Shown here piece by piece: positions 5,397 through 37,186 of a DNA stretch of 64,000 nt (positions are counted from its first letter, which is position 1; every line of letters starts with the position of its first letter). This stretch comes from Macrostomum lignano (Eukaryota). Where the stretch lies: positions 124,001-188,000 of the forward strand of contig NIVC01000461.1 of assembly GCA_002269645.1 (NCBI GenBank), written 5' to 3'. Below the pieces are notes generated by a model. It saw only the letters and a list, made by a program, of their open reading frames with translations, was not told the origin of the DNA and ran no database searches. The position numbers and the translations under genes are program-made.

Positions 5397-8300
5397 ATGA
5401 TTTCTCAGCAAGCCGGCGGCTTCACTCAGCGCAACAGGCACTGCTGCGCTGGCATGGACGACAACATCTTCAGGGACAAGTGAGTGAAAATGCGAGCCTG
5501 CCTATCGACTTGGCTGCTGAGTTTCGGGCAACTCCTATATCGGATGAAGAAGGAGAGGACTGCTTAATCTAGACAATGCATAGATGAAGGAATAGAATGG
5601 ATTGCTAATCTATTCAATGCATAGATGAAGGAATAGAATGGATTGCTAATCTATCCAATGCATAGATGAAGGAATAGAATGGATTGCTAATCTATCAAAT
5701 GCATGGATGAAGGAATAGAATGGATTGCTAATCTATCCAATGCATAGATGAAGGAATAGAATGGATTGCTAATCTATTGAATGCATAGATGAAGGAATAG
5801 AATGGATTGCTAATCTATCCAATGCATAGATGAAGGAATAGAATGGATTGCTAATCTATTCAATGCATAGATGAAGGAATAGAATGGATTGCTAATCTAT
5901 TCAATGCATAGATGAAGGAATATAATGGATTGCTAATCTATTCAATGCATAGATGAAGGAAAAGAATGGATTGCTAATCTATTCAATGCATAGATGAAGG
6001 AATAGAATGGATTGCTAATCTATTCAATGCACAGATGAAGGAATATAATGGATTGCTGATCTATCCAATGCATAGATGAAGGAACATAATGGATTGCTGA
6101 TCTATTCAATGCATAGATGAAGGAATATAATGGATTGCTGATCTATTCAATGCATAGATGAAGGAATATAATGGATTGCTGATCTATTCAATGCATAGAT
6201 GAAGGAATATAATGGATTGCTGATCCATTCAATGCATAGATGAAGGAATATAATGGATTGCTGATCTATTCAATGCATAGATGAAGGAATATAATGGATT
6301 GCTGATCTATTCAATGCATAGATGAAGGAATAGACTGGATTGCTAATCTATTCAATGCATAGATGAAGGAATAGAATGGATTGCTGATCTATCCAATGCA
6401 TAGATGAAGGAATATAATGGATTGCTAATCTATTCAATGCATAGATGAAGGAATAGAATGGATTGCTAATCTATTCAATGCATAGATGAAGGAATATAAT
6501 GGATTGCTAATCTATTGAATGCATAGATGAAGGAATATAATGCATTGCTAATCTATCCAATGCATAGATGAAATAATAGAATGGATTGCTAATCTATCCA
6601 ATGCATAGATGAAGGAATATAATGGATTGCTAATCTATCCAATGCATAGATGAAGGAAGATAATAGATTTCTAATCTATTCAATGCATAGATGAAGGAAT
6701 AGAATGGATTGCTAATCTATTCAATGCATAGATGAAGGAATATAATGGATTGCTAATCTATTGAATGCATAGATGAAGGAATAGAATGGATTGCTAATCT
6801 ATTGAATGCATAGATGAAGGAATATAATAGATTGCTAATCGAGTCAACATGAAAAAAAAATAAAATAGATAGCTAACCTTGAAAGGCATAGAAATAAATC
6901 ACTCAAATTTTGTCGCTCTAAAACCTCCTGTTTCTTTGCTTTGAGTTTCACAATTGTCATAAATCTTACAGTAGTCAATATCAGTAGACGGTTACTGCCA
7001 GGCTCAGATTTAGGGTTGGATTTTTGTGCAGTTTAATTCGCCTCCAATGTGGTTCTTCGCACAGGCTTTTCTTATCTGCTACTGGGGGACGACTTTGTCT
7101 GGCTGCGAGACAAATTGTTGCAAGTTTCTTCTTTCTCAGGAAAACTGAGAAACTGAACAATTGCAGAGAAATTGGAATGGGATGAAATATGACTATTGGC
7201 AGAGTTCAAAAAAAGGTTTCTCAGGCTATTGATGCCCCCAAGAGCGCTGACAGTGTACATGCCTTCCGATTAGAGGGTCCGCTGTCGCCTTGAAAACGCT
7301 CCACTCTCACCTCACCAGCCTACACTAGCAGCCTGGTGCCGCAACTTGCATCACCCACACAGTTGAGACCAGAACCGCGGTGTAACTTGCGTCACTTGTG
7401 GCTGAGCTCTGAGTGAGACCAGAACCGCGGTGTAAATTGCGTCACTTGTGGCTGAGCTCTGAGTGAGACCAGAACCGCGGTGTAAATTGCGTCACTTGTG
7501 GCTGAGCTCTGAGTGAGACCAGAACCGCGGTGTAAATTGCGTCACTTGTGGCTGAGCTCTGAGTGAGACCAGAACCGCGTTGTAAATTGCGTCACTTGTG
7601 GCTGAGCTCTGAGTGAGACCAGAACCGCGGTGTAAATTGCGTCACTTGTGGCTGAGCTCTGAGTGAGACCAGAACCGCGGTGTAAATTGCGTCACTTGTG
7701 GCTGAGCTCTGAGTGAGACCAGAACCGCGTTGTAAATTGCGTCACTTGTGGCTGAGCTCTGAGTGAGACCAGAACCGCGGTGTAAATTGCGTCACTTGTG
7801 GCTGAGCTCTGAGTGAGACCAGAACCGCGGTGTAAATTGCGTCACTTGTGGCTGAGCTCTGAGTGAGACCAGAACCGCGGTGTAAATTGCGTCACTTGTG
7901 GCTGAGCTCTGAGTGAGACCAGAACCGCGGTGTAAATGGCGTCACTTGTGGCTGAGCTCTGAGTGAGACCAGAACCGCGGTGTAAATTGCATCACTTGTG
8001 GCTGAGCTCTGAGTGAGACCAGAACCGCGGTGTAAATGGCGTCACTTGTGGCTGAGCTCTGAGTGAGACCAGAACCGCGGTGTAAATTGCGTCACTTGTG
8101 GCTGAGCTCTGAGTGAGACCAGAACCGCGGTGTAAATTGCGTCACTTGTGGCTGAGCTCTGAGTGAGACCAGAACCGCGGTGTAAATTGCGTCACTTGTG
8201 GCTGAGCTCTGACTAAAGCTGACCACTGGCTTCGGGGGTAAAAGCGTGTTGCTGATTTCCCTATAAACAGTCGCTAATATTTTCCATACAGCGCGTCCGA

Positions 8301-11300
8301 AACCTCGGCTGGCAGCCTGCGGAGCCGCCTGCCGCTGGACTCCACCGGCACGTCAGTCAGCCGGCCTTCGTCCTCGTCGTACCAGTCGGAGCGATCGGCG
8401 GAGAGCCCCGTGCGACGGCCGCCGCCCCTTGGCGGGCAGCGCAAGCAGCTGACGGCTCTGGCGCTGGCACCACAGCCGCAGCGGCAGCAGCAGCCTCAGC
8501 AACAGCAGCAGCATAGAGTGGCAGAGTTTCAGTTCGGTATGTTTTGGAACCATTTATGACTATATGGGTGCTCAGCTCGGGTCTTTAATTTCATTTTTAT
8601 GCTCAAAACGTGTCAAGAAGTTCATATAAAAATATCGAAATCTTATTCTAAATCGATCGCATCGAAACCGCCCACCCACAGATGAGTCCGAGTACGACAT
8701 CGTGCATAGCAACGCGGTGGAGACCACCGAGATGACGCCCTTTTATCCGCAGCCCCGACTGCGTCTCTCCCGACGCAGTGCCGGCGGCGGCGGCGGCAGC
8801 AGCGGCGTCTGCGCTGACTGCGGAGACGACTGCGAGTGCGACAGCTGCTCGCTGATCTCCTCCACTGGAGCTGCCAGCTGCCGGTCGCGAAAGAGCCGCA
8901 AATCCTCCATCGCGTCAACTTCGAGAGCTCGGCGCGAGATGCGCAAGTCAGCGGCCACAGCGGCAGTGGCCGGATCAGAGGCTGCTCATTCAGGGGTCGT
9001 CGGCGTGACGGTCGCTTCGGCAGCGACGGCCTCTTCTGACGTTGCTTCACCACCAGCTGCGAACCTCTTCTCCAACATCCGCGGCCTCTTCACCAAGTGG
9101 CTCCGCGAGACCAAAGCCTCCTCTGCCGCGGCTGCAACGACAGCCAGTTCCGCTGAAGGTCACAACGGTGTCGCAAACGGCGCCTGCGGCGGGGCCGGTA
9201 GGGGCGGAAAGGCGCAGTACTTGAACATCGCCTGCCCGCAGTTCCCGCAGGAGTGCAGCAACTCGGACCTGCAGCACGCGCACAATGTCATGAACATGAG
9301 CAGCAGCTTTGACAGCGACTATCTGCTGCACTGCTACACCAGCCCGTCGGCCTGCTCGTCCGCCGCCTCCGATCTGCCATCGACGCCGTGCCGCACCGAG
9401 GACGGCGACGCTGCCGGGGCCTTCACCATCGGCGGCGGAAGCGGCTGCGCCAGTGGAAGCAGCAACGGCTTCGGCGCCTTCGACAGCGGCCGCGACGGTG
9501 GAGCCTCCTCGTCCATTGTTGGCGGATTCGTCGACTGGGGCGTCCAGTTCGACTACGACCTGCTGCAGCGGAGGAACCCGCGTCAGGCCGCCCGCCGGAT
9601 GCTTGACGCCGCGACCACCGCGCGCAGCTGGAGTCTTCAGTCGCAGGCAGGCAGCGGCGGCGGGCAGGAGCGAAAGGGCCAGCTGCTGCTCTGCTCCACC
9701 TGGCCGCCAAGCGGTTGGCGATTGGCTGCGCTTAGCAGTGGTGAGAGTCGCCATTGGATGCCATTTTTGCACCCCTGGGCTGCAGGCAACTGGTTGTCCG
9801 ACTGACTGATGGAACGGACTGCTCTGAATTTTTTTGCCTTCCGGGGCTTCAGCCTTCACCGCTTTTTGCCTAATTTTTAAACGGTGCTGCTTAGAGACAG
9901 GGATTTTGTGTTCCACTACAGCATTGGCATAGGCATCAAACGGAGTGTTTGAGGAGTCTTTTTAGTACCGTTGGAGCCTCGCAATCCGTGGTAAAGCCTA
10001 CGATTATAAAGACCCAGGGATCTGCAACACTGTGCTGCGATGGGGTCGCCAGAACCCTTTCTGGAAAACAGAAACCTTTTCCTCCGCCTAACCTCCCTCT
10101 CCGAGAGCAAGCAGGTACACACTGGAGTAGTTGTGTATTGTGCTTTTGCTTCTTCACGTAAGACCTGTTTACTTGTTTACTGGACCCTTTTGTTTCCGAG
10201 GATATCTTAATAGCAAAGTTACCAAGTTTTCCTTGTTTTAGGCTATAGACAGGAGGGGTTGTAGCCTACTGATTAGAGCATCGGACTCACGACTGAAAGG
10301 TCGGGGGTTCGATTCTCGACCCTCGTAACAATATGTGTCCTGGATCAAGACACTTAACTCTGCACTGCTTCAGTTCACCCAGCTGTAAAATGGGTGCCGG
10401 CATTAGCTGGGTTAATTGAGGGTGTGTGGCGACCCCCCAGTCCTTGGACTGAACAGCCGTACGCAGCCTTCAGATGCGCTGCGCAATAGCTGCGGCTGAG
10501 CTGTCGGTTGCATACCTGTCCATTAGGGCAGGTGTACTTAATAAATTATATTAATTATTATGCCATAGACAAAAAATTCAACCGTACCAGTGCATCAATC
10601 AGCTGACCTCGGTCATCGGTCATCGGCCCTTGTTCTCAATCGTCTTCAAAGCTAAAGATCTTTAAGGGGTTGTGAACTTTTAATTCTGAGCAGACTATTA
10701 TATTAAAGCAGAGCCAGGGACTAGTGCGATCCCCGATCCTGTCAATCTCAGGATGAAGTCTAGCGTGAGTGCCTGCAGCCAGGATTAGTCATGCAGCTCT
10801 CTACGAGTGCACTGCAGCTCAACTGTTGCCTGATCGGGAATCCCCCAAAACCACCCCCACAATTACAGAAGAGGAGGACTGCTCAACGGGCGGCGGCGCT
10901 GCCTGCTTCCAAGTTGTTGATAGCGTCGTTCAAAACAGCCGAGGAAGGTAAAGTATAATGCCGGGATCAACAGGAATCCAAGTGTCCCATTGTTCTTTAA
11001 CTGTGCGCCTACTATATTTAGCCGGTGTCCCGCTGTCAACAGAAAACAAATCAATTTACTCACAGCGACTACAGAGAAGGATAATAAAATTAGCTAAGCC
11101 TCTTTTCCCAGCGACTCACTCCGACTGAAGACGTCATAGCAATTATTGAGTCTCATATTTTGTTGAAAATGAATCAATCTTCTGGAGTTTGTAAGTGCAT
11201 GAGCTTTATTGTCTGTTGTCTCCGCGTCTCCCTTGTCCCGGACCGGCCCTTTCTGCTTTGGGGCAGGGGAATTGGGAATCGGTTTTTTGTCCAAGCCAGT

Positions 11301-14300
11301 TTTTTATCGATTGATTTCCTTCTCTCTCTCCCATGCCACTCACCCTTTTGGCTGGGCTGATTTGCACCTCCTACCGGCGCTGCCCTGGCGGCTCCCTGGA
11401 ACTCCCCTATCTGTGGAGCCAAATTATCGCGCTTTCAATCCCTGGATCGGACTCTTGCTGGCTTGCCTGGATCCCGCAGCAGCAGCAGTGACCGGCCTGG
11501 GAGGCCTAGGTGCGGGGGAGTGGAAAGAAACCGAACAAAACTTCTCGAATCATGTGACAGCGTGGGCGTTTTCTCTGCTCGACTTTTCAAAGTTTTAATG
11601 CTTTTTTATTTTCAAAAAGTACAAATCGCCTAAACCCGATTTCGATTCTCTTTCAGCTTCGAAATCAAGGAGTTCGAATTTAACATTCCCTATGACGGCA
11701 TCGTGTTTCAAGACTGCTTAGCCAAGGGCAGGAGGCGCAAAGTGTTCAGGTTGGAGTGGGCACTTGACTTTGACTTTTACGTGTACACTTCACATATCAG
11801 CTTAACGATGGGGGTTGTAGCCTAGTGGTTAGAGCGTCGGGGGTTCGATTCTTAACCTACTTGGAACAATTTGTGTAACCGCTTAACTCTGCACTATTTC
11901 AGCTCACCTAGCTGTAAAATGGGTGCCAGCATTAGCTGGGGTAATTGAGGGTGTGTGTGGTGACCCCCCCCCCCCAGTCATTGGACTGAACAGCCGTACG
12001 CAGCCTTCAGATGCGCCGCGCGATAGCTGCGGCTGAGCTGTCAGTTGCACATCTGGCCCATACAATATGAATTTTATTGTTTAAAAAACGTGGAGGAGGA
12101 ACAAAATAATAATCTAATTTATAGTCATTTTTAGACATTTTAAGGATTTTTGGTGAGGACATCTAGAAAAACTTATAAATTTTTTTTAGTTAAAATATTT
12201 TTAAAGAAATAAGTTTTTCTACTTAGCTAAGTCAAAGATTGGCGTGAGTTATCTCTAGCGACTCAGAAGTGTAAGCTCCAAATCTCGTATGCTCAAATCT
12301 CATGAGCTCAAAACTTCATATCTGTTTAGTTTCTTTCAGTTCAAGCAGTGACCGACATTTCAGCTGTCAACCCTGATCCTAACTGACAAATCCCGCAACT
12401 CCACGCATCCGCAGGGGTCAGTGGCACGGTGACGTCACGATTCACACCTACGAGAATCTTGACTGCAAGGAGCGCAGCAAGTTCTGGGAGGAGGTGGCCA
12501 AGCTCAGCCTCATCAGGCACGAGAACATCTTCCTGTTCATGGGCGCGTCGATGGACCCGCCGACGTCGCGTTTCGCCGTGGTCACCTGCCAGCGGAAGGG
12601 CCAGTCTCTCTACGACCGGGTGCACCTGCACCCCAGGGAGAAGCTGGGCTCAGCCAGTAAGCTGTCAATCATTCGTGACCTGGCGCAGGCGGCCGGCTAC
12701 CTGCACGCTAAAGGCATTTTAATCAGGCGTTTCAATTCGCACAACGTCTTTCTTGAGCCGCGAGCCAAACTGTCGCTGCAGGACTACTCTGTGATCGCAG
12801 AGGAAGAGGAGGACAGGTAAGAAGTCAATTAGATGGATACTCAATATGCGCTTGTATCAAGGACTAATCAAGTGGCAGAATGGTAAAACAACATTTCTTA
12901 GAAAATTTTAGAAGGAAGGTTTTACCGAAAAGAACATTATGGAGTTTTAATTTTTTCAGCACAAAAATTGTTATTGCTTTGAATAGGGGGCAGGCCCAGC
13001 TTCTTATGGCTCTACGGATGTTCATAAAGCTTTTCGTTTAGAAAATTAGTGCTTTGTGTTAATTTTATATCCTACTTTCATTCGTACAATGCATATTGTG
13101 CCTAAAAGAATCATAAAAATGGCACAGCTCGTCTCATTGACGTTATGAATCTTTTTATCATTCTTAGCTCAATGACTGAGTAACAAAATGTGAAACAGAA
13201 TGAATGATCAAATAGTTTAATAAACTCAAAGAGTCCAGTTGTGCCAGTTTTTTTATTATTTAGGCATGGGACATGTCGGAGGATATAAAATCAACATGGA
13301 ATCCTAATTTTCTAAACGAAAAGCTTTAATCGTGAAGATCAATATAGAGCTATAACAAAGGCAAGACATATCGAAAGATGAGCACTGTGTCTCTCTTTTA
13401 TCAAGAGCCATAGCAGTTTTTGTGCTAAAAAAATGAAAACCTATCTCCGTAATGTTTTTTCGGTAAAACCAGCAACCCGCCTACTAAAATTTTCTAAGAA
13501 ACGTAAATATCCTGATAAAATTTTGAGTCAACCTCGGGGAAAAACTTCATAATTTCGCCAGCAATTTATTCTGCAGTGCCCTATTTCTATTGTCATCTCC
13601 TGCAGAGAAGTTGCCACATTCAGAGTGAGTTGCCAAGGAACTTAAGCATAAGCCACGAAGTTAGCAAGAAACTCTTACTCTTGGGGGACCATGTGGTTTA
13701 ATGCTGTACGCAGCCACGCACTCATACACACGCTCACTCCGGGTGTACAGCGGCCCTGACTTTCTAATCGTCAGACATGCACACTCTGTGTGCTTTGGGG
13801 GCTGGCGTTCATGGCTGCAAATCGCACCACAACCTCTCTGGACCAATTTTCGTTCACAAGCCCGAAATGAATGGCCACGCGAGTGCGGAATCGAACCAGT
13901 GTCGTTGGAGTGTCGTTATTCAGATAATCCACTTGTCTCCTATGGCTCATGCTTGGATTTTTAGGTGCAGATAACTTAACGTGACTTGATGACTTGCAGA
14001 TAACTCGATAACTTGTATTGGATAACTAATCAAGCCTGAGTCACAGAAAAAAACGCCTGTAAATCTCGTCCATCATCATATTTTCTGCTTGCAAGCATCC
14101 AATGTCCCGTTTACTTGAGATTTTCGAACTAATCGTGACGAGCAAATAACGCAACAAAAAACGGTGAATGAAATTCTCTGGCAATCGGGCTTTCCCGACC
14201 GAAGTGAATGAGTGACAGAATGGCTGGCATCGCTAGGTATATAATTCATGCAAGTTATTCAAGTTAGCTACAGTTTCAAACAAGTTACCTGCTGGCATGA

Positions 14301-17300
14301 CCACGTTGATTTTAGCAGTAAAAATCGATCAAATTATCCTCCAATTTTCAGCCAATTTTCTAATACTGCGACGTCAAATTCTAAAATTAAGTTTTATAGT
14401 AGCTAGACTAGATTAATCGGCTAAATTAATTTGGTCTGGCTAGGCATCGCAGCATTCTAAACTGATTGAAGAAAGAGGCTTGCAGTGGTGTACTGTCAGT
14501 GTCCCGGCTGTTATGAATCTGAAATTCACGCGGGCGGCGCCCTCAGCGGGTGGTGAAGCCGCGGAGCAGCCTCTCGCGGAAGCTGCCCAGCCGCCGGTAG
14601 GCTCTCTGGCAGCAGCCGTGCGGCCAGGGCAGCTGGATCTCGCACGGCAGCCGGCCCGGCACGCCGGCCTCGAAGAATTCGAATGCGCGATACCACCAGA
14701 CCTGGGCGAGGTGGCTGCTCCGCCGTTCCGCAGAGGGGCACCTGGCCAAGGCGTGGTACACGAGGAACAGGCGGCTGGCCAGCCAGTAGCCGATGATCAG
14801 GTCCACCGTGTAGTGGGCGTGCGAGGACAGCAGCAGCATGAAGCTGATCAGACAGGTGATGAGGCTCGCCCAGCGAAGCGGACTGGCTGACGCAGGAGTA
14901 TACTCCCTGATGGTCAGGTAGGACAGGGTGAGGCTGGCCGTGTGCCCCGAAAAGATGGAGTCGCCGCAGATGTTGTGCGTGTTGCTAACCGAGAAGCCGG
15001 CGCCCATGGCTATGCGGCTAACTCGGCCGTAGATCTCGGCGAAGTTCAGGCTGGAGTTGGAGCGCGGCCCGCAGTGCCGTCGGGCGTTCGGGTCGGGCAT
15101 GGCGGTCACGGCGATGGTCACGGAGCGATAGAGGAACACAATGGCCAGTATGAAGCCGGTCCTGCGCAGCAGCACCCAACGGTGTCTGTGGGCCAAGCAC
15201 AGGGCCAGCGCGGTGCTCATGTTCAATAGTAGCAGGGCCTCGCAGGCCATCAGGGCCCAGTCGCTGCGCGGCACAAGTCTGAGGCTGACGTCCGGCAGCG
15301 GCGGGTACTCGGGCACGTAGTCGTGCACGTACGCCAGGCTGATGGCGGTCAGCAGCATGCCGCCGCCCATGCATGCCAGGGCTAGCAGGGTTTTCCAGCA
15401 TGCAGTCGGCACTGCAACGCTTCCTGCAACACTGCTGCCGCTGCCGCCGCCAGCGCTGCCGCCGACGCCGCTTCGTTCGTTGATTTCAATTTCAGCGTCA
15501 CCAACGGCTGCCGTCTCCGGGATGCTGCAGTCGCCACCCTGTTGCGGCATCAGCTGATGCTGCTGGTGACTGTGCGGCGGACAATCCGGGTCAGCGAACT
15601 CCAGGCGGCGTCGCGGCATGTCCGCGCTGATCCGGTGATCCACTGAGGAATCCATGGGGTCGAGAAATTGATTACCCGTCTGTTGATTCTGAGTTTCCGA
15701 GGTAGCGAAGAAAAACAGCCAACTCTCTTCAGTGGTCAGAATTTTCAAACGAAATTGAGGGGTTTTGAAGCTTGACAGATGCGAGTTAGAGCAACTTTAG
15801 CTAAAGATCCAAGTGAAAGAGTGGGTTTCGGCCATAGACAATTGATTGGTTCAACTATATCGATGTCGATCGACGATCTTGTTGTTTACAAATAATATGT
15901 TTGATTCATTGGACTTCACGAATTTCTGCATACTGAATTTAACCTTAAAAATGCAACTTTGTTTTACTTGTATCATCGAGCCTAAAGCTAAAGTCAATAC
16001 GCATTCTTCATACGCTGATTTTCAGGCCAGGCTATTTGGTGGTACCGGCGTCTCTGGTCTGGTACACGCCGCCAGAGATTCTCACTCAGCTGGCGGACAA
16101 AACGTCTTCTATTCCTGATTCGGCATTCACTACAGCGTCCGATGTGTTTGCATTTAGGTAGGCGGGTGAGGCTTTTGGATGGGCCAGGTGCGGGAGTGAG
16201 GTGGCTGCAAGAGTTCAAAGGGGAGAGAGAGGCGAGAGGCGGGGAGTGAGGTGGCTGCAAGAGTTTAAAGGGGGGAGGCGGGGAGTGAGGTGGCTGCAAG
16301 AGTTTAAAGGGGGGAGGCGGGGAGTGAGGTGGCTGCAAAACTTGGAAAGTGAGATTAAAGGAAGATATCTCAGGTTTGCCTTTAACTTTAATATGTATAT
16401 GTATATAGCCAGCTATCGACTTGCTATTTGATTCGGGCCAGGCTATCTAACAAGTAGATAGGGGCTGTTATCCATGGAGACGCAAATGCAAGCCACTACC
16501 TCTCTTCTCGCCCCAGTGTGATCATGTACGAGGTGTGCGCCGGCCGCTATCCGTACGCCAAATGCGACAGGCGCCAGTACATGGAGAATGTCTGCCAAGG
16601 CAGGCGCGACACAGTGCAGGATATCCGGGTGTCGGACATCATTAAGGTGAGGCTGCTCAGTGTGCTTATAGTTAAAAACGACTAGTCGTTCTTAGTAATA
16701 GGTTAGTTGTTTGTAGCGACATTAAATACCTCGACCCTGAATCCACTAAAAAAACTGCAAAACTCGCGCAGAACCTCATCACGGAATGCTGGAGTCATGA
16801 CCCTCTGTACAGGCCAGAGTTCAGCCAAATCAATGCAGCGCTGCATAATCGGGTAAGTTTATTTTTAGAAACCAAAAAATAGTCGATGGTAATGGGTGGG
16901 GGCCGTAGCCCAGTGGTCTAGCGGGGCGCTTTTTTGTGCCAGCGGCCCAGGCTCGATTCCAAGTGCAGTCACATTCATTTGGGGCTAAATTGGAATCTCG
17001 GCTTGGCTCTGCTCGTGCAATTAACGCCCTTGAGGGCCAACCTCCCAGGCACAGTGAAGTGTACAAGACTAACGATAAATGGAGCTAGGGTCGCTGTACA
17101 TTCCCGTGTGTGTGCCTGTGCGTTTGACTGCGTATGTATCCGCGCACTTGTGTGCCTGCTCAGGGGAGTCGGCGGAATGGGCAGTAATGCCTCTCGCCGG
17201 TTGTGTGACAATGTCGCTTAAAGAGCGCCAGGATGCACACAGCCACTGCCTCTAACTAAACTGTAAACCTATGGTAGTGGGTGGGTGCACCTCTCTGCGC

Positions 17301-24247: not shown

Positions 24248-28691
<4,444 letters not shown>

Positions 28692-28979
28692 GCCTTAATT
28701 CTGACTGAATGTTTTCTAACAGGTCTGTCGTTCTTCCTTCTGTGGAATTCGCATCAACAGAGTTGCAGTTTTCCTTGAGTTGCTGTGCTGAATCTGCTCA
28801 GCTGCTGCGTAGACTTGGGTCTGACCGCCCCCGTCAGGTATCCAGCCCGAGCTTTTATCTTATTTAACTGTACACAGAAAGTTCAGGTAGCAGGCCTCAC
28901 CGGGCCAAGGAGATCTTGAACGAACATCTGGATAGTTGCCAACTCCCCCGTTCCAATTCTGCTTTTAAGACTCCATATC

Positions 28980-29670
<691 letters not shown>

Positions 29671-30712
29671 TTTTGTGACCGAGAAGCAGTCCCAGGATTC
29701 CGTAATTATCAGAGATGGACAAACTTTTACATTTCATGGAAATTTTCTGTCACTCCAACATACAGACAGATTATGACCAAACAATTTTTTCTAAATTTAA
29801 ATGAGACAGAACTATGTCTAACAATGCTGGTTTAAGAGGGGCAGTTGGCAGCTATCCAGGTATTTTGCCCTGGGTCTCCTTGAGCAGTTGCGCTCCGCCA
29901 CGGTCCGCAGCCACCCAGCGCAGTCGGCCTTTTTATTTTTTCTCTCTCCTGTCCTGCGCTCGCGCACAAGCCCGGCTAATTTTAGCTCGGCCAAGTTCGC
30001 CTCTCGTTCGTTAGCCAGCCTCAGCCCCCGGCTCAGCGCACAGCGCCAAAGGCGAAGAGCACGTGTGTCAGAAAGAGTAACCTCCCGGCCCCCAGGCCCC
30101 CCGGGTAGAGAAACTGAGACCCGCGCCTGCCCGGCCTCCCCAAGTTTCTAAAATTGCGGATGCGGGTGCCTTGCGGTGAAATGATTCCCAAATGGCAATA
30201 ATGAAAAATTGCGCAAAATTAAACCAGCTTGAATTAGAACTGTTGCTTTATTGATGAAGCACGCAATTGAAAGCGTGGTGAATATGAGTTCCCCATTAGC
30301 AGAAGTTTGTTTAACCATTCAGCACTGCAGATGTTTCACGGCATGCTATTTGAGTACTCAAGTAACTTGAAGAACAGCTTTTAAGGGCCTATTGCTTTCT
30401 AAATAAGATGCAATTTGTGGCTGCGAGATTAAACAGGGAGGGATTATAAACATAAATAGTTGAGAAAAAACTGGCTGTGTGAATGAATTATGCCAATCAT
30501 TGATTAGTGTCTGCTGGTGACGGACTGGCGGGCTCCTATTTTGGCACCCCGACAACCCGAAATCTTTGTTCTGCTCCGACGTGCCGAGCTCGATTCCATT
30601 ATTTGAAGTTTGAAAGTCGGAAAGTTGGTTGTAAAAAAGCAATAGCTCGTCTCTGATTGGCTACAGCTCTTGTCAATGCAAATCGCTCAGCCAATCAGCA
30701 GGGACCAGTCGG

Positions 30713-31084
30713 TCAGTCAGCCTCCCGCTGCTGGCAGTCACTCGGCTGAGCTCTGCAGCCCCGTCGGCACTCCTTCTGGCACTCCTTCCTGCGCCGGCGC
30801 AGCCGCCGCCGCCTCTGCCGACGTCGCTGGCGCCTCTGCCTGGAGTTTCGGCCCTTCTTGCCACCGCGCCGGCGATCGCCCCGACGTCGCCGCTGCTGCC
30901 GCCTGTCGGACCTTCGACGACTTGGCGAACTGTTGGCTGCCCGCTGCTTCTTGCGGTGGTTGCGACGGCGGCGCTTCTTTTTGATCTGCTGCTTGCATTT
31001 CTTGCGGCAATAACACTTCTGCTGCAGCTTCAGCAGGTCCGCTGAGGGCGTCAGGCGGGTGAGGGTTTGCGATTGGGGCACATG

Positions 31085-31167
<83 letters not shown>

Positions 31168-31195
31168 TCCTGCCTGCCTGCCTGCCTGCCTGCCT

Positions 31196-31263
<68 letters not shown>

Positions 31264-31286
31264 TCCTGCCTGCCTGCCTGCCTGCC

Positions 31287-31319
<33 letters not shown>

Positions 31320-31322
31320 GCC

Positions 31323-31374
<52 letters not shown>

Positions 31375-31402
31375 AGTCTGTCTGTCAGTCAGTCTGTCTG
31401 TG

Positions 31403-31495
<93 letters not shown>

Positions 31496-31498
31496 GCC

Positions 31499-31559
<61 letters not shown>

Positions 31560-31562
31560 GCC

Positions 31563-31655
<93 letters not shown>

Positions 31656-31658
31656 GCC

Positions 31659-31723
<65 letters not shown>

Positions 31724-31726
31724 GCC

Positions 31727-31775
<49 letters not shown>

Positions 31776-31778
31776 TAG

Positions 31779-31815
<37 letters not shown>

Positions 31816-31816
31816 T

Positions 31817-31863
<47 letters not shown>

Positions 31864-34800
31864 GCCTGTCTGTCTGTCTGTCTGCCTGTCTGTCTGTCTG
31901 TCTGCCGCTCACCCGCGGACAGGCAGGCCTTCCTGAAGCGGTGCTGCATGGTGAGAGATCTCTTCTCGGGCCGGTCGGAAAACTGGAACACGGCGTGGAT
32001 TTCAAACTCGGCCACCCCGCTGACCCTCTTGGTGCACTGCAGGTTGAGCTGAAAGCCTGCGTCAGGAAATAAAACTCTTGATTATGATTGCTATGCAATT
32101 CACATGCGCGTACACTATTGTTAAAGTACATTCTCAGTCTGCCCCTGGGTCAGTAAAGAATGCTGGCAGCGCCGGGACTGCAGCTCATAAAATTGAATCG
32201 AGATAAGGAAGACTGGAGAACACAGTTGACAGTTGCAAATCTGTCTATTTTCAGGTGCTATAGGGGTTGTAGCCTACTGGTTAGAGCGTCGGACTCACGA
32301 CTGTAAGGTCGGGGGTTCGATTCCCGACTTTCTCGGAAAAAGTTGTGCCCTTGAGCAAGACACTTAACTCTCATGCATTGCTTCAGTTCACCCATCTGTA
32401 CCAGCATTAGCTGGGGTAATTGAGGGTGTGTGTGGCGACCCCCCCCCCCAGTCCTTGGACTGAACAGCCGTACGCAGCCTTCAGATGCGCCGCGCAATAG
32501 CTGCGGCTGAGCGGTCGGTTGCACATCTGGCCTAATTGGGGCAAGTGTAATAAGAAAAATCAAAGGCTTGTAGCTCCTGCGCCCAGTGCTTTAACCGATT
32601 GCCGTTTTGACAGGTAAACTTTAAACAATTAAATGTTTTCTTTTAGTTATGTAAAGCTAAAATTCTGCACCGCTACTTACAGTAGACGATAGGCATATTG
32701 TCACAATACTTGACTTACTGGACTCGGCGGCTGGAACAAAGCCGGTACTGGGCACCGTCAGTCTGGGATGCAGCAGCACTGATTGATTGTGCGATTGCAG
32801 TCCCATGAACTTGTACTGCACCTGGTGGGTTCAAATTAGAATGTTTGATTTGAGAGCGATTTAACTCTCGATGAAGGCATGTACAGCCGAAGCAGGTCGC
32901 TGAACTCGAGTTTCTTAGAAATGTGAAATTTTGCTTTTTCTAGCGCCGGATTTTTCTCAACTGAATTCGTCTATGGTGAAACCCCATTTACGGGGACAAC
33001 TAATATTGGTTTTGTCAGCCTAACTGAGAATAAAGCCATCCAAAGTGAGAATCCTGCCTACGCTGACTGCAAAGGGCCTGGCTGCGTGCAGCCTTAGTCT
33101 ATGGGCCATAGACTATAAAGGACAAGCAAAGTGATAAAAAGCCATCCAAAGTGAGAATCCTGCCTACGCTGACTGCGAGGGGCCTGGCTGCGTTCAGCCT
33201 AGTCTATGAGCCATATGAGTCTAGGATTTTAACTCTTTACTTTACTGTATCATCCAGTGTGTTCCTGTTTCCGTTATTCCGTTCAAGCTATTGGCTAGTC
33301 ATATGGCTCAGAAGCTCAGAAGGTATAAAAATAAAAGAGTACGACGCATAGACCAATCGATTCTCACATTGGATGGCTTTTTATCACTTTGCTTGTCCTT
33401 TATTGTCTATGGCCCATAGACTAAGGCTGCACGCAGCCAGGCCCTTCGCAGTCAGCGTAGGCAGGATTCTCACTTTGGATGGCTTTATTCTCAGTTAGGC
33501 TGACAAAACCAATACACTCGGGATGCGAAACGAGCCAAATCATGATAAAAAAGTTGGGAGCTCGTTTGAAAGCAGTGTTCTATGGCCATTCCAACTGCAA
33601 CTCTTGAGTCTAAAGAGGTGTGAGGGCAAATGACAAGCCTTCAACTCTTGTGCGAATGTGAAAAAATGTCGAGAAAGTGCAGCGTCTTTAACTGCAGATC
33701 AAACTATAACTCAGAAGAAGAAAGCCGAACAAGGATATTTGCTTTTCCTCGAGATGCACGAGAACGGGAGCGTTCGAGACAAACCCTACCAAATATTTTG
33801 GAGGTAAGAAAGAAAGAGAGCATAAATGAAAGAGAAAGAGAAAGAGACCATAAATGGGAGTGCACTCAACTTTGATGTTTTGAAAGCTTACATGTAGGGG
33901 TGATTTCGTGACTAAGCTGACACGAAAACGACAATACATCATTTTGCTACCTATTTTTAGATCGTTTGACGCATCCATGTTCGTTCACGCTACTAACCAA
34001 AGAGTAGTTGCAAAAATCAAAACAAGAGTGAACCATCTAGGGTTATAGTATCTGTAATTAATACCACAAAAAGTATGAATATCAGTAATGTTGTACCATA
34101 GACATTTTTGCCCAAGCTACACTTTCATAGCAGGGGGCACAGATCCTATTTACCTAAATGTGTCACTCCAGCCGTCTCCGAGACCCTGAAACCCCTTGAG
34201 TTAAAGTCATAGACACCAGCTGCTGCTGCTAATGCTTCCCAGCAGAAGCTTTAGTCTATGGTCTTAAACCCGGGGTTTTCGCGCTGCGGCCAGGCGGCTG
34301 AAGTGGCGCATCTAGGGTTTTACAGAATCTGTGAAGCCCACTTACTGCCATAGACAATTTTTTAATGTATAATTTTTGTCATTTTTATTCTTTGTTGTTC
34401 TTCCATGTGTATTTGTTAATTATAAATAAACTATTGAAATTTCCAATCGGATACTCGTAATGTTAAGCGGGCGTTAATGGTGTCTGTGGTGTTTAAGGGT
34501 ATCGTATAATAAAGCTTGAGATTTAGCTATGCAAGTTTGAATGACCAGCTCTAAACCCTAAGGCTTGCTTGTCTCTCGGTCGATAGATTATCGTGTTGTC
34601 TATGGCTCACAACCTGTGGTGTCCTCTACAGGCATGAAAAAAGCTGAAGTTTGCTTGTCTCCCAGTCAATAGTTTATCGAGTTGTCTATGGCTCACAACC
34701 TGTGGTGTCCTCTACAGGCATGAAAAAAGCTGAAGTTTGCTTGTCTCCCAGTCAATAGTTTATCGAGTTGTCTATGGCCCACAACCTGTGGTGTCCTCTA

Positions 34801-37186
34801 CAGGCATGACAAAAGCTGAAATTTGGTTGTCTCCCAGTCAATAGTTTATCGAGTTGTCTATGGCTCAACCTGTGGTGTCCTCTACAGGCATGACAAAAGT
34901 TAAAGTTTGCACGAACCCTTGTTGGCGGCAGGCCGTCCCTGGAGGCGGTGGCCCAGTGCACAGTAAAGCTGTTGATGCTGTTAGCCAGAACGATGCCAGA
35001 CCGGGACAGCGAGTTGAAGTAGATGCCAGACAGCAGGTGCCCGTCAGCAACGATGGGGAACCTGTCCGCTGTCAGGCGGTGCAGCAGCTGCTCCGCGCCG
35101 CCTGCGGATGAGTTGGGGAAGGAAATGGCCGCTGGGTGGCAGAGTTGGAGCTGTGACGTGAGAAGAGAAGTCAAGGAAGGGTCCATATGGGGGCTAAGGG
35201 GAGCTAATATGGGGGCTAAGGGAAGCTAATATGGGGCTAAGGGGAGCTAATATGGGGGCTAAGGGTGAGCTAATATGGGGGCTAAGGGGAGCTAATATGG
35301 GGGCTAAGGGGAGCTAATATGGGGGCTAAGGGAAGCTAATATGGGGGCTAAGGGGAGCTAATATGGGGGCTAAGGGTGAGCTAATATGGGGGCTAAGGGG
35401 AGCTAATATGGGGGCTAAGGGGAGCTAATATGAGGGCTAAAGGAAGCTAATATGAGAGCTAAGGGTGAGCTAATATGGGGGCTAAGGGGAGCTAATATGG
35501 GGGCTACGGGTGAGCTAATACGGGGGCTAAGGGGAGCTAATATGGGGGCTAAGGGTGAGCTAATATGGGGGCTAAGGGAAGCTAATATGGGGGCTAAGGG
35601 GAGCTAATATGGTGGCTAAGGGGAGCTAATATGGGGGCTAAGGGGAGCTAATATGGGGGCTAAGGGGAGCTAATATGGGGGCTAAGGGGAGCTAATATGG
35701 TGGCTAAGGGGAGTTAATATAGGGGCTAAGGGGAGCTAAAATGAAGGCTAAGGGTGGAATAATATGAGGGCTAAGGGTGAGCTAATATGAGGGCTAAGGG
35801 GAGCTAATATGGGGGCTAAGGGTGAGCTAATATGGGGGCTAAGGGGAGCTAATATGAAGGCTAAGGGGAGCTAATATGAAGGCTATTTTTTATTAGAGGC
35901 AGGGGGGTTGTGTGCACCCTGGCGCACTTTAAGCGTCATTGGCACACAACCGGCGAGAGGCATTACTGCCCATTCCGCCGACTCCCCTGAGCAGGCATAC
36001 AAGCGCGCGGATACGTACGCAGGCACACACTCACACAGGAGTGCACAGCGGCCCTAACTTTATTTTATCGTTAGGCATGTACACTTCACTGCGCCTTGGG
36101 GGGTTGGCTCTCAAGGCCGTTAATTGCACGAGCAGAGCCAAGTCGAGATTCCAATTCAGCCCCAAATTAATGTGACTGCACTGGGAATCGAGCCTGGGTC
36201 GCTGGCACACCAGAGCCTGCGCTAGACTGCTGGGCTACGGTCCCCCTAATATATAATGAGGGCTAAGGGGAGCTAATATGGAGGCTAAGGGAAGCTAATA
36301 TGAAGGCTAAGGGGTGCTAATATAAAGGCTAAGGGGAGCTAATATGAAGGCTAAGGGTGGACTAATATGAGGGCTAGGGTGAGCTAATATGGGGCTAAGG
36401 GAAGCTAATATGGGGGCTAAAGGGAGCTAGTATGGGGCTAAGGATTAGCTAATATAAGGGCTAAGGGAAGCTAATATGGGGGCTAAGGATTAGCTAATAT
36501 AAGGGCTAAGGGAAGCTAATATGGGGGCTAAGGATTAGCTAATATAAGGGCTAAGGGAAGCTAATATGGGGGCTAAGGATTAGTTAATATAAGGGCTAAG
36601 GGAAGCTAATATGGGGGCTAAGGATTAGTTAATATAAGGGCTAAGGGAAGCTAATATGGGGGCTAAGGATTAGTTAATATAAGGGCTAAGGGAAGCTAAT
36701 ATGGGGGCTAAGGATTAGCTAATATAAGGGCTAAGGGAAGCTAATATGGGGGCTAAGGATTAGTTAATATAAGGGCTAAGGGAAGCTAATATGGGGGCTA
36801 AGGATTAGCTAATATAAGGGCTAAGGGAAGCTAATATGGGGGCTAAGGATTAGCTAATGTAAGGGCTAAGGGAAGCTAATATGGGGGCTAAGGATTAGCT
36901 AATATAAGGGCTAAGGGAAGCTAATATGGGGCTAAGGATTAGCTAATATAAGGGCTAAGGGAAGCTAATACGGGGGTTTGAGAGACGGGTGCTGCAGAGG
37001 GTGTCACGTGAGCGCCAACTCACCTCTCGGCTTGCAGCGGGGCCGCAGCGGGTTTTTAGCGCTGAGCAGCATCATCTGTGAGATCACTGACTCAAGCATT
37101 TGCCGTTCAAACCAGACGTTCAACTCGCCGCTGCAAGCGACAGCCGCCAGCAGCAGGAGGAGGCTGAGGCGCAGCGGACCCGACAT
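30713..37186 (-). CDS. Secreted WIF-domain protein with polybasic C-terminal tail, 5 exons, 307 aa
   Basis: Exons 37186-37024, 35101-34917, 32821-32719, 32056-31913, 31041-30713 (924 nt, phases 1/0/1/1). Signal peptide [23 protein letters not shown]-like sequence ELNVWFE...FPIVADG...INSFTVHW...[30 protein letters not shown]...[19 protein letters not shown]...FRKAC aligns by eye to the WIF1 WIF domain, including both disulfide Cys. The tail is Arg/Lys-rich. Confidence 0.85.
31084..31903. repeat. (GCCT)n grading into (GTCT)n microsatellite
   Basis: Fills the last intron of the WIF-domain gene. Confidence 0.98.
32263..32560 (+). mobile_element. tRNA-derived CORE-like SINE (family A), copy 3
   Basis: ggggttgtagcctactggttagagcgtcggactcacgactgtaaggtcgggggttcgattcccgac...cttgagcaagacacttaactc. 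Confidence 0.8.
33004..33513. mobile_element. Foldback/MITE-like element with inverted arms of about 155 bp
   Basis: 33004-33160 is nearly the reverse complement of 33359-33513. Each arm contains a GTCTATGG-N-CCATAGAC palindrome. Confidence 0.8.
34590..34900. repeat. 86-bp tandem repeat, each unit ending in GTCTATGG
   Basis: GTCTATGG at 34598, 34684, 34770 and 34856. Confidence 0.9.
35188..36975. repeat. 22-23-bp minisatellite interrupted by a SINE
   Basis: Unit atatgggggctaaggggagcta; lies in WIF-domain gene intron 1. Confidence 0.95.
35885..36246 (-). mobile_element. tRNA-derived SINE (family B), copy 2, inside the minisatellite
   Basis: Reverse-complement match to 16898-17260. Confidence 0.8.

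What the first reader, a model, noticed from the sequence alone, without database searches (positions are those of the whole stretch)
30713..37186. Secreted WIF-domain-only protein with an Arg/Lys-rich tail in place of EGF repeats
Seen in sequence: five phase-compatible exons give a signal peptide, a WIF domain with both conserved Cys, and a tail of about 110 aa dominated by Arg/Lys with two small Cys clusters ([16 protein letters not shown]). There is no transmembrane helix, kinase or recognisable EGF repeat. Established: WIF domains bind Wnt (Hedgehog-related function in Drosophila Shifted) and normally occur in WIF1/Shifted with EGF repeats that bind heparan sulfate, or in RYK/Derailed receptors. 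Inference: the polybasic tail may replace the EGFs as a proteoglycan anchor, giving an unusual morphogen modulator. The gene is fragmented in the ORF track.
Basis: partly seen in the sequence, partly recalled or inferred. Interest (0 to 1): 0.72.

Follow-up and report, generated by a model that had tools for sequence, protein, structure and literature searches.

The report
Flatworm WIF1 lacking EGFs, polybasic tail
This is a real, already annotated Macrostomum lignano gene for a secreted Wnt-inhibitory-factor (WIF) domain protein that lost the usual EGF repeats and kept, and greatly lengthened, a very basic cysteine-stapled tail; the same short form occurs in planarians and tapeworms.

Summary
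Five GT/AG, phase-compatible minus-strand exons (37186-30713) give a 307-aa protein with a signal peptide, a complete WIF domain and a 109-aa tail. Pfam WIF scores 47 bits, and the AF2 model matches human WIF1 with TM 0.82. The tail is 48% Arg+Lys (net +44) and has two Cys clusters. There is no TM, kinase or EGF.

The window is Macrostomum lignano Mlig_3_7 contig NIVC01000461.1.

The gene is not unique. Two near-identical copies, a 36%-identical paralogue, Schmidtea "wif-like" and tapeworm "WIF/Protein shifted" proteins share SP + WIF + K-C-x-C-x3-C ... K-x-C-x3-C-R. They also share an extra invariant Cys in the WIF domain.

Three intron positions and phases match an annelid WIF1. That gene's EGF exons are phase 1-1, and it too ends in a polybasic tail. 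The best reading is therefore WIF1 minus its EGF exons with an ancestral basic tail retained. In this gene the linker between the Cys clusters grew from about 13-20 to 71 residues.

Heparan-sulfate anchoring and Wnt/Hh binding are plausible but untested. This is a new variant of a known kind and of moderate interest.

The parts
37024..37186 (-). Exon 1. ATG at 37186. Signal peptide aa 1-20 (37186-37127, [20 protein letters not shown]). Start of the WIF domain (LNVW...) and the family-invariant extra Cys51 (RCKP). Donor AG|GTGAGT, phase 1.
   Evidence: model; the only hydrophobic window is aa 1-26; L22 N23 W25 R28 C51 P53 invariant in the family
34917..35101 (-). Exon 2, N-terminal half of the WIF domain (aa 55-116). 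Acceptor ...CCGCAG, donor AGG|GTTCGT, phase 0.
   Evidence: The AF2/Foldseek alignment to WIF1 spans about 180 columns and so includes this half. The intron after it matches annelid WIF1 in position and phase.
32719..32821 (-). Exon 3, WIF domain core ([34 protein letters not shown]). Donor A|GTAAGT, phase 1.
   Evidence: Intron position and phase are identical to Paralvinella WIF1.
31913..32056 (-). Exon 4, C-terminal part of the WIF domain with the conserved disulfide cysteines C158 and C195. Donor G|GTGAGC, phase 1, at the same place where the EGF1 exon begins in WIF1.
30713..31041 (-). Exon 5, the whole tail (aa 199-307) plus the TGA stop (30713-30715). First Cys cluster K-C-Y-C-R-K-K-C at 30995-31015. 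Polybasic linker aa 215-285 at 30782-30994. Second Cys cluster C286...C301 at 30734-30781.
   Evidence: Same last-exon junction in paralogue Mlig030313. K207 C208 C210 C214 K288 C290 C294 R295 are invariant in 10 family members. GC3 is 0.79, like the rest of the CDS, and six Arg codons are used. Differences among the 3 copies are 2 synonymous plus 1 K->R, with no indels.
30247..30252 (-). AATAAA, the first polyadenylation-type hexamer, 461 nt after the stop. This is the probable 3' UTR end.
   Evidence: motif only; no poly(A) data examined
31086..31904 (.). Intron 4 is almost entirely a (CTGT/CTGC)n microsatellite of about 205 units.
35185..36976 (.). Intron 1 is mostly a 22/45-nt minisatellite, interrupted at 35886-36250 by a dispersed repeat.

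Best explanation
The locus is copy g3 of Macrostomum lignano gene Mlig015645. It belongs to a flatworm-wide family of short secreted WIF1 derivatives ('wif' or 'wif-like').

Shown here:
- The protein is a signal peptide, a complete WIF beta-sandwich and a C-terminal module, in which two invariant Cys motifs (K-C-x-C-x3-C and K-x-C-x3-C-R) bracket a basic linker.
- The gene is transcribed as modelled and is under purifying selection.
- It shares intron positions with WIF1.

Inferred origin: WIF1 lost its five phase 1-1 EGF exons. This joined the WIF exons in frame to a basic C-terminal exon of the kind seen in annelid and brachiopod WIF1.

Inferred mechanism:
- The WIF domain binds a lipid-modified morphogen, most probably Wnt and possibly Hedgehog.
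- The two Cx3C motifs staple a helical hairpin. The fifth tail Cys probably pairs with Cys51 of the WIF domain.
- The basic hairpin or loop (net +44 here, 71-residue linker against 13-20 in relatives) binds heparan-sulfate proteoglycans or other polyanionic matrix.
- The protein would therefore act as a short-range, matrix-tethered morphogen trap. The tail would do the glypican-binding job that the EGF repeats do in vertebrate WIF1 and Drosophila Shifted.
For: Gene model and domain:
- Searches give the model and the WIF hit.
- The AF2 model has mean pLDDT 76 and its top PDB hits are WIF1 and Drl-2 WIF domains.
- Its CDS is identical to the transcript-derived GenBank CDS.
- The three gene copies differ at 10 sites, 8 of them synonymous (dN/dS about 0.08, P=4e-4). 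There are no indels in the low-complexity tail exon, while the flanks carry 3-14 gap positions.

Family:
- An exhaustive HMMER search found only 10 relatives. The closest are 249-264-aa proteins of M. lignano, Hymenolepis/Rodentolepis and Schmidtea with the same layout.
- All 10 aligned members hit only Pfam WIF.
- The Cys signature and Cys51 are invariant.

WIF1 rather than RYK ancestry:
- The family profile scores WIF1 at 2e-15 (60 bits) and DRL-2 at 1.8e-8 (37 bits).
- The non-flatworm hits are WIF1 of a brachiopod, an annelid and a mollusc.
- Three of three comparable intron positions and phases equal Paralvinella WIF1. That gene's EGF exons are phase 1-1 and its polybasic tail exon starts in phase 1.
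- Terebratalia and Paralvinella WIF1 end in polybasic tails.

Tail structure: helices carry the Cys motifs in both AF2 models. In the Schmidtea model it is a helix-turn-helix with the turn about midway between the two Cx3C motifs.

Function by analogy:
- The WIF domain suffices for Wnt binding but does not bind heparan sulfate. The EGFs bind heparan sulfate and glypicans, and deleting them weakens WIF1 (PMC3285576).
[quoted passage not shown] Tapeworm wif is up-regulated in the scolex-neck together with Wnts.
Against: - No binding, localisation or loss-of-function data exist for this protein or, as far as I could find, for any family member. Ligand identity (Wnt or Hh) and heparan-sulfate binding are inferences.
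- The tail contains eight R-x-[KR]-R motifs. It may be clipped by furin-type convertases in the secretory pathway rather than persist as an anchor.
- AF2 helices in polybasic sequence are often over-confident. The alignment was only 10 sequences deep, and I could not inspect Cys-Cys distances.
- Homology of the flatworm tail to the WIF1 C-terminal tail rests on position, intron phase and composition, not on alignable sequence.
- The intron comparison used one annelid gene with a defective 5' model, and no RYK gene was compared.
- I could not confirm that the planarian 'wif' of the expression papers is the same gene as GenBank 'Smed-wif-like'.
Confidence: 0.6

Rival explanations
1. The polybasic tail is a processing or retention segment, not a lasting anchor. 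Furin-type proprotein convertases cut at one or more of the many R-x-K/R-R sites in the trans-Golgi or at the cell surface. This would release a free, diffusible WIF domain, or switch the protein from tethered to diffusible.
For: There are eight R-x-[KR]-R motifs between aa 222 and 283, all in the linker between the two Cys clusters. The linker varies greatly in length between family members (13 to 71 residues) while the flanking Cys motifs are invariant. That pattern fits an exposed loop.
Against: If the two Cx3C motifs are disulfide-bonded, cleavage within the loop would not release the tail. Tapeworm members have Tyr/Pro-rich linkers with few dibasic sites, so cleavage cannot be the family-wide purpose. 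Long oligo-arginine runs are known furin inhibitors as well as substrates (general knowledge, not tested).
Confidence: 0.2
2. The protein works in the Hedgehog pathway like Drosophila Shifted, stabilising or carrying lipid-modified Hh on the matrix rather than inhibiting Wnt.
For: [quoted passage not shown] NCBI names the Taenia solium member 'Protein shifted'. This is an automatic name.
Against: In Shifted the Hh-promoting activity needs Shifted's own EGF domains, and the WIF domain alone is weak (PMC3285576). Those domains are absent here. Planarian wif is enriched in wnt1+ cells.
Confidence: 0.2
3. It is a truncated, secreted decoy derived from the RYK/Derailed receptor rather than from WIF1.
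For: The predicted fold matches Drl-2 (7me5, TMt 0.75) almost as well as WIF1. RYK-type WIF domains are the other known context of this domain.
Against: Sequence and profile scores favour WIF1 by 23 bits. All non-flatworm hits of the exhaustive search are WIF1 proteins. Three intron positions and phases equal annelid WIF1. There are no TM or kinase exons on this strand. The only kinase fragment in the window is on the opposite strand 18 kb away.
Confidence: 0.05
4. The tail is an annotation or translation artefact of a GC-rich low-complexity 3' exon. All three frames are open there, and the real protein would end differently.
For: All three minus-strand frames across 30713-31081 are free of stops. 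Older gene predictions for other assemblies shift frame in this region (P0002, P0004, P0005).
Against: The frame is fixed by the GT/AG junction, and that junction is conserved in the paralogue. The transcript-derived CDS of three gene copies is identical in length. In this frame the Cys motifs align with invariant motifs of planarian and tapeworm proteins. GC3 is 0.79, as in the rest of the CDS, and both silent changes fall on third positions.
Confidence: 0.03
5. The M. lignano-specific expansion reflects a new, non-morphogen use of a secreted polycation, for example antimicrobial, adhesive or mucus-binding, or a seminal-fluid component.
For: The net +44 tail is far beyond that of other family members. 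No expression data for this gene were found.
Against: The WIF domain and Cys framework stay under purifying selection. A short-tailed paralogue and orthologues exist, and they point to a shared signalling role.
Confidence: 0.08

Closest known systems
Flatworm 'wif' / 'wif-like' proteins: Schmidtea mediterranea Smed-wif-like (AQT19790.1, 249 aa); Hymenolepis, Rodentolepis, Taenia, Hydatigera and Anoplocephala WIF-domain proteins (231-294 aa; HmN_000932100 'WIF'); M. lignano paralogue Mlig030313g1 (264 aa)
   Same: [quoted passage not shown] K-x-C-x3-C-R. Pfam finds only WIF in them. The paralogue has the same five-exon structure.
   Different: Identity is only 24-37%. The linker between the Cys motifs is 71 residues and almost pure Arg/Lys here, against 13-20 in planarian and tapeworms and 26 in the paralogue. 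Both Macrostomum paralogues have two additional cysteines (C286, C301).
WIF1 / Shifted (vertebrate WIF1, Drosophila Shifted, lophotrochozoan WIF1 such as Terebratalia A0AAU7E8Z9 and Paralvinella KAK2158068)
   Same: Both are secreted. The WIF domain has the same disulfide and the same fold (TM 0.82 to 2ygn). This is the best sequence and profile match. Three WIF-domain intron positions and phases are identical to annelid WIF1. Both have a hydrophilic, and in lophotrochozoans polybasic, C-terminal tail.
   Different: All five EGF-like repeats are missing; in WIF1 these are the heparan-sulfate/glypican-binding and Wnt-affinity-enhancing part. Extra features are the insertion with Cys51 in the WIF domain and the Cys-stapled tail motifs. 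A dedicated WIF1 survey reported no platyhelminth orthologue (PMC7565927).
RYK / Derailed / Drl-2 receptors
   Same: They have an extracellular WIF domain of the same fold (7me5 TMt 0.75).
   Different: There is no transmembrane helix or (pseudo)kinase. The sequence match is weaker, 37 against 60 bits for the family profile.
Secreted signalling proteins with heparin-binding polybasic C-terminal tails (R-spondins, long VEGF-A and PlGF isoforms, class-3 semaphorins, midkine/pleiotrophin). This is a functional analogy recalled from general knowledge.
   Same: A folded ligand-binding domain is followed by a highly basic tail that restricts diffusion by binding heparan sulfate. Several of these tails are also furin substrates.
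   Different: They are unrelated in sequence and fold. This tail is far more charged and is bracketed by conserved Cx3C motifs. Nothing about this analogy was tested here.

Membership tests
WIF1 / Shifted family | N-terminal signal peptide (secreted protein) | tested here: met
   The only hydrophobic 19-residue windows are aa 1-26. [20 protein letters not shown] is followed by the conserved LNVW start of the WIF domain. No dedicated signal-peptide predictor was available.
WIF1 / Shifted family | WIF domain (PF02019) with the conserved disulfide pair | tested here: met
   Pfam 47.2 bits against a cutoff of 25. C158 and C195 align to the WIF1 cysteines. Foldseek 2ygn TMt 0.82.
WIF1 / Shifted family | Five EGF-like repeats after the WIF domain | tested here: not met
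   No EGF Pfam hit at E<=1. No EGF Cys pattern in any frame of the 64-kb window apart from translated microsatellites. The transcript-derived CDS goes from the WIF exon straight to the tail exon. The next gene downstream is a PQ-rich protein without domains.
WIF1 / Shifted family | Hydrophilic C-terminal tail | tested here: met
   The 109-aa tail is 48% R+K. Terebratalia and Paralvinella WIF1 also end in polybasic tails.
WIF1 / Shifted family | Shared gene structure in the WIF domain (orthology indicator) | tested here: met
   Three of three comparable intron positions and phases are identical to Paralvinella WIF1, including the phase-1 intron where the EGF1 exon starts. Only one comparator was used, and no RYK control.
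WIF1 / Shifted family | Binds Wnt (WIF1) or Hedgehog (Shifted) and heparan-sulfate proteoglycans | not testable with these tools
   This needs biochemistry. Only an analogy from PMC3285576 is available.
Flatworm wif-like family | SP + WIF-only architecture of about 250-300 aa, with WIF the only Pfam domain | tested here: met
   10 of 10 aligned members hit only PF02019. Lengths are 231-307 aa.
Flatworm wif-like family | Invariant extra Cys in the WIF insertion (R/K-C-x-P) and tail motifs K-C-x-C-[RK]-x2-C and K-x-C-x3-C-R | tested here: met
   C51, P53, K207, C208, C210, C214, K288, C290, C294 and R295 are invariant in alignment A3.
RYK / Derailed receptors | Transmembrane helix and intracellular (pseudo)kinase after the WIF domain | tested here: not met
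   There is no hydrophobic segment after aa 26 and no kinase Pfam hit in the protein. The only kinase-like ORF in the window is on the + strand at 12494-12820.

The most novel reading that the evidence does not exclude
Flatworms rebuilt WIF1. After losing all five EGF exons, the ancestral basic C-terminal exon became a new mini-domain. This is a twin-Cx3C disulfide-stapled helical hairpin, tied to the WIF domain through a lineage-specific Cys, whose basic loop takes over glycosaminoglycan binding. In M. lignano the loop expanded to a +44 polycation. That would make an essentially non-diffusible Wnt (or Hh) trap that could sharpen positional signals during regeneration. It would be a natural experiment showing that the EGF array of WIF1 can be replaced by pure charge.
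Probability: 0.3. Interest if true: 0.6.

Novelty: new variant of a known kind. Interest (0 to 1): 0.45.

Why it matters
WIF1 and Shifted are textbook extracellular modulators of Wnt and Hedgehog. Their EGF repeats are held to be needed for glypican binding and full activity.

A whole phylum, including the main regeneration models (planarians, Macrostomum) and parasitic tapeworms, appears to use an EGF-less WIF1 with a cysteine-stapled basic tail instead. A dedicated WIF1 survey reported no platyhelminth orthologue (PMC7565927), while flatworm papers simply call the gene wif. The difference in architecture seems to have gone undiscussed.

If the tail does bind heparan sulfate, the family gives a compact natural design (WIF domain plus charge) for testing how matrix tethering sets morphogen-inhibitor range. 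M. lignano is transgenic-tractable, so this can be tested directly. The finding also corrects the idea that the tail is a de novo replacement, because lophotrochozoan WIF1 already has such a tail.

Tried and rejected
1. Word-indexed homologue searches with the full protein and with the WIF part returned only M. lignano copies. In the first, the polybasic tail filled the candidate list. Relatives appeared only with the exhaustive HMMER search and the profile search.
2. Older M. lignano predictions (P0002-P0006, P0009; 'ZP', 'C2H2', 'DUF4708' and 'Velvet' names) are frame-shifted or fused models of the same loci from an earlier assembly. I did not use them as evidence for alternative architectures.
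3. I searched for alternative EGF, TM or kinase exons. A regex over six frames found only microsatellite translations. The kinase-like ORF at 12494-12820 is on the other strand. The downstream neighbour has no domains.
4. The tRNA-like sequence in intron 3 is not called by ARAGORN or Rfam. It is a dispersed repeat.
5. Literature searches for 'wif-like' with planarian, and for the gene id Mlig015645, found nothing.
6. I considered whether C-x-C-x3-C is a relic of EGF1. MAFFT places it under the first EGF cysteines of WIF1, but the spacing does not match an EGF, so I leave this open.
7. I could not check disulfide geometry because the structure tool returns no coordinates.
8. I did not analyse the lipid-pocket or Wnt-contact residues of WIF1. 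I could not recall the residue list reliably and had no coordinates.
Full report
**1. What is in the sequence**

On the minus strand, five exons are bounded by canonical AG acceptors and GT donors. They lie at 37186-37024, 35101-34917, 32821-32719, 32056-31913 and 31041-30713. They join with phases 1, 0, 1, 1 into a 924-nt reading frame of 307 codons plus TGA.

The product has three parts:
- It starts with [20 protein letters not shown]. This is the only hydrophobic stretch in the protein.
- It continues with a WIF domain.
- It ends in a 109-residue tail with 38 Arg and 14 Lys (48%, net charge +44). The tail has seven cysteines in two groups, KCYCRKKC (208-214) and [16 protein letters not shown] (286-301).

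Evidence for the WIF domain:
- Pfam finds WIF (PF02019) at 47.2 bits, E 2.4e-12, above the 25-bit cutoff, and nothing else even at E<=1.
- The PDB sequence search finds human WIF1 at E 1e-5 and DRL-2 only at 0.53.
- The HMM covers only the C-terminal half of the domain, but an AlphaFold2 model shows a full beta-sandwich from residue 22 to 195. That model has mean pLDDT 76 and pTM 0.62, from a 10-sequence alignment.
- The model's six best PDB matches are all WIF domains. Human WIF1 2ygn scores TM 0.82 and E 3e-11, and Drl-2 7me5 scores TM 0.75.

**2. Where it comes from and whether it is expressed**

The protein is 99.7-100% identical to three GenBank proteins of the flatworm Macrostomum lignano, BOX15_Mlig015645g1, g2 and g3, and to UniProt 'WIF domain-containing protein' entries. 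The g3 locus (NIVC01000461.1, locus L003) is 100% identical to the window in all exons and in 500-700 nt of each flank. The window is therefore that locus of assembly Mlig_3_7.

The GenBank annotation of that assembly was derived only from RNA evidence: StringTie/TACO on RNA-seq plus a de novo transcriptome, with ORFs called by TransDecoder (PMC5730564). The exon 4 to exon 5 junction and the stop are therefore transcript-supported.

An AATAAA lies 461 nt past the stop.

**3. Is the tail really coding and constrained?**

All three frames are open across exon 5, so openness proves nothing. Four other lines of evidence support the frame:
- **Copy comparison.** The three genomic copies keep exactly 924 nt with no indel, although the flanks differ by 3-5% and carry 3-14 gap positions. 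Of ten distinct nucleotide differences, eight are synonymous and two are not (Q125H, and K230R in the tail). This gives dN/dS of about 0.08, and P = 4e-4 for that many silent changes by chance. In the tail alone the count is two silent changes and one conservative change.
- **Codon composition.** Third-position GC in the tail (0.79) equals that of the WIF part (0.80). Six Arg codons are used, so the tail is not a trinucleotide repeat.
- **Paralogue structure.** A 36%-identical paralogue, Mlig030313g1, has the same five exons with introns at the same places. Its last exon also starts one residue after C-L-S-x.
- **Alignment of the Cys clusters.** In this frame the two Cys clusters align with invariant motifs of planarian and tapeworm proteins.

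**4. The family**

Word-based searches saw only M. lignano. An exhaustive HMMER scan of 1.84 billion representatives with the WIF part gave just ten hits. Apart from M. lignano models, the best are:
- a 254-aa Rodentolepis/Hymenolepis protein, the 'WIF' HmN_000932100 of tapeworm papers;
- a 249-aa Schmidtea mediterranea protein deposited as 'Smed-wif-like'.

Weaker hits are canonical WIF1 proteins of a brachiopod (Terebratalia), an annelid (Paralvinella) and a bivalve (Mactra). A profile search added Anoplocephala, Hydatigera and Taenia solium; NCBI names the Taenia protein 'Protein shifted'.

All ten aligned flatworm members hit only Pfam WIF. The alignment shows a family signature:
- an extra invariant Cys in an insertion of the WIF domain (R/K-C-x-P; C51 here);
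- the WIF disulfide pair;
- K-C-x-C-[RK]-x2-C;
- a linker;
- K-x-C-x3-C-R.

The linker is 13-20 residues in tapeworms and the planarian, and 26 in the Macrostomum paralogue. Here it is 71 residues and almost pure Arg/Lys. A 25-nt imperfect direct repeat spaced 63 nt apart hints at internal duplication. Both Macrostomum paralogues have one more Cys pair (C286, C301).

The unusual feature of this particular gene is therefore the expansion of the basic linker, not the architecture as such.

**5. Relation to WIF1 and RYK**

A profile of the family scores human WIF1 at 2e-15 (60 bits) and DRL-2 at 1.8e-8 (37 bits).

I mapped the exons of Paralvinella WIF1 (locus L005). Its three WIF-domain introns that can be compared sit at exactly the same alignment positions and phases as introns 2, 3 and 4 here:
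- phase 0, before [V/Y]-x-Y-K-F;
- phase 1, in the codon before F-Q;
- phase 1, in the fifth codon after the last WIF cysteine.

In the annelid, the third intron is followed by EGF exons that are phase 1-1. The polybasic tail exon then begins in phase 1. According to PMC7565927, each EGF of mouse Wif1 is likewise a separate 96-bp exon followed by a C-terminal hydrophilic exon. Deleting the EGF exons would therefore leave the frame intact and give the flatworm structure.

Terebratalia and Paralvinella WIF1 end in ...KKSKHNRHHRKRRKDRKKRNRKHLSR and in a 49-residue Lys/Arg-rich tail. A basic tail was therefore probably already present before the EGFs were lost.

I conclude, as an inference, that the family is a WIF1 derivative and not a RYK fragment. 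The tail is better described as retained and elaborated than as a replacement. PMC7565927 reports no Wif1 orthologue in platyhelminths, whereas flatworm papers list WIF as present (PMC11805424). The EGF-less architecture explains this discrepancy.

There are two limits to this argument. Only one annelid gene was compared, and its 5' end is mis-modelled. No RYK gene structure was compared.

**6. No hidden exons**

There are no EGF-type cysteine patterns in any frame of the 64-kb window except translated (CTGT)n arrays. The next gene downstream on the same strand is a PQ-rich protein without Pfam domains. The only kinase-like ORF (12494-12820) is on the opposite strand.

The introns are filled with repeats:
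- an 819-bp (CTGT)n array makes up nearly all of intron 4;
- a 22/45-nt minisatellite fills intron 1;
- an 86-bp x4 array abuts exon 2;
- there are also dispersed and foldback elements.

This explains the length differences between gene copies (4.8 to 6.5 kb) and the fragmented ORF picture.

**7. How it probably works**

*Shown:* this is a secreted WIF-fold protein with a conserved, Cys-framed basic C-terminal module, expressed and under purifying selection.

*From the literature:*
- The WIF domain of WIF1 suffices for Wnt binding but does not bind heparan sulfate.
- The EGF repeats bind heparan sulfate and glypicans, and their deletion weakens WIF1 in flies and fish.
- WIF domains can also engage Hedgehog (PMC3285576; PMC8699845).
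- Planarian wif is enriched in dorsal-midline muscle and wnt1+ cells (bioRxiv 10.1101/2022.08.31.506052).
- Tapeworm wif is up-regulated in the scolex-neck with Wnt ligands (PMC6225667).

*Inferred:*
- The WIF domain traps Wnt, or possibly Hh.
- The five family-core tail cysteines plus C51 make three disulfides.
- The two Cx3C motifs probably staple an antiparallel helical hairpin.
- In the AF2 model of the Schmidtea protein, the tail is helix 195-217, a turn, then helix 220-241. C207/C211 and C230/C234 are roughly symmetric about the turn. In the window protein the tail is three helices with pLDDT 65-93.
- The basic linker then forms a loop or hairpin that binds heparan sulfate or other polyanions and keeps the inhibitor close to its source.

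I put about 0.9 on the identity and ancestry statements and about 0.5 on this mechanism. The overall figure given is 0.6.

**8. Rivals**

- **Convertase processing.** The linker carries eight R-x-[KR]-R motifs, so convertases may cut it. If the Cx3C staples exist, cleavage would nick the tail rather than release it. This rival is compatible with the main model, and I rate it at about 0.2.
- **Hedgehog-directed, Shifted-like role.** This is possible, but Shifted needs its EGFs for that activity.
- **RYK origin, mistranslation, or a non-signalling polycation role.** Each of these is unlikely, for the reasons given in the rival entries.

**9. Novelty and verdict**

The gene is already in GenBank as a hypothetical protein and in UniProt as a WIF domain-containing protein. 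Orthologues are named in planarians and tapeworms.

In the searchable literature I found no description of the EGF-less architecture, the conserved Cys-framed basic tail, its likely origin by EGF-exon loss, or any functional test. It is therefore a new variant of a known kind (WIF1 family), and within that variant the M. lignano gene is an extreme member.

I rate interest as moderate (0.45). It is a tidy and testable case of domain loss in a core morphogen modulator in regeneration models, but it is neither unexpected in kind nor mechanistically demonstrated.

Noticed in passing
window 31086-31904 (also about 27100-27550 and 28950-29700): Intron 4 of the WIF gene is almost wholly an 819-bp (CTGT/CTGC)n tetranucleotide array of about 205 units. 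Similar arrays recur between this gene and its downstream neighbour. They create long spurious ORFs (CLSV..., TDRQ...) on both strands.
   Followed up: partly
window 35185-36976, insert at 35886-36250; copy at 16898-17260: Intron 1 is a 22/45-nt minisatellite (ATATGGGGGCTAAGGGGAGCTA). It is split by a roughly 360-bp dispersed repeat that has an 86%-identical inverted copy at 16898-17260 and fragments at about 13716 and 2217.
   Followed up: partly
window 32262-32550; copies at 10254-10536 and 11808-12058: A roughly 290-bp dispersed element in intron 3 has a head that looks tRNA-like by eye. ARAGORN and Rfam call nothing there. It is probably a SINE-type repeat.
   Followed up: partly
window 33004-33159 and 33359-33514: A 156-bp inverted repeat pair, 98% identical and 200 bp apart, lies in intron 2. 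This is a foldback or MITE-like element. Just downstream (33630-33875, + strand) is a THAP-domain fragment, E 9e-4 and below Pfam's cutoff.
   Followed up: partly
window 34565-34910: An 86-bp tandem repeat of 4 copies ends only 7 nt from the exon 2 splice donor (34917).
   Followed up: no
window 12494-12820 (+): An ORF with a protein-kinase fragment (PK_Tyr_Ser-Thr, 30 bits). By eye it resembles the KSR-type pseudokinase region. It is on the opposite strand and is not part of the WIF gene.
   Followed up: partly
window 14543-15748 (-): A 401-aa single-exon ORF has a PAP2_C domain (74 bits). By eye it resembles a sphingomyelin-synthase-like protein.
   Followed up: partly
window 24700-27090 (-); L001 16481-20719: The downstream neighbour gene encodes a 626-664-aa low-complexity protein with PQ(E)PQ and [10 protein letters not shown] repeats and no Pfam domain. 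It is conserved next to all three WIF gene copies.
   Followed up: no
L001, L002, L003 (NIVC01000128.1, NIVC01000127.1, NIVC01000461.1): The assembly holds three copies of the locus. Exons are 98.6-100% identical, but gene spans are 4.8, 4.9 and 6.5 kb because the intronic repeat arrays differ. This fits the recently duplicated M. lignano genome.
   Followed up: yes
L005 (Paralvinella palmiformis JAODUP010000178.1) 6001-6156: The annotated first exon of the annelid WIF1 model encodes a non-WIF N-terminus, so the N-terminal half of the WIF domain and the signal peptide are missing. The public model is probably incomplete at its 5' end.
   Followed up: no
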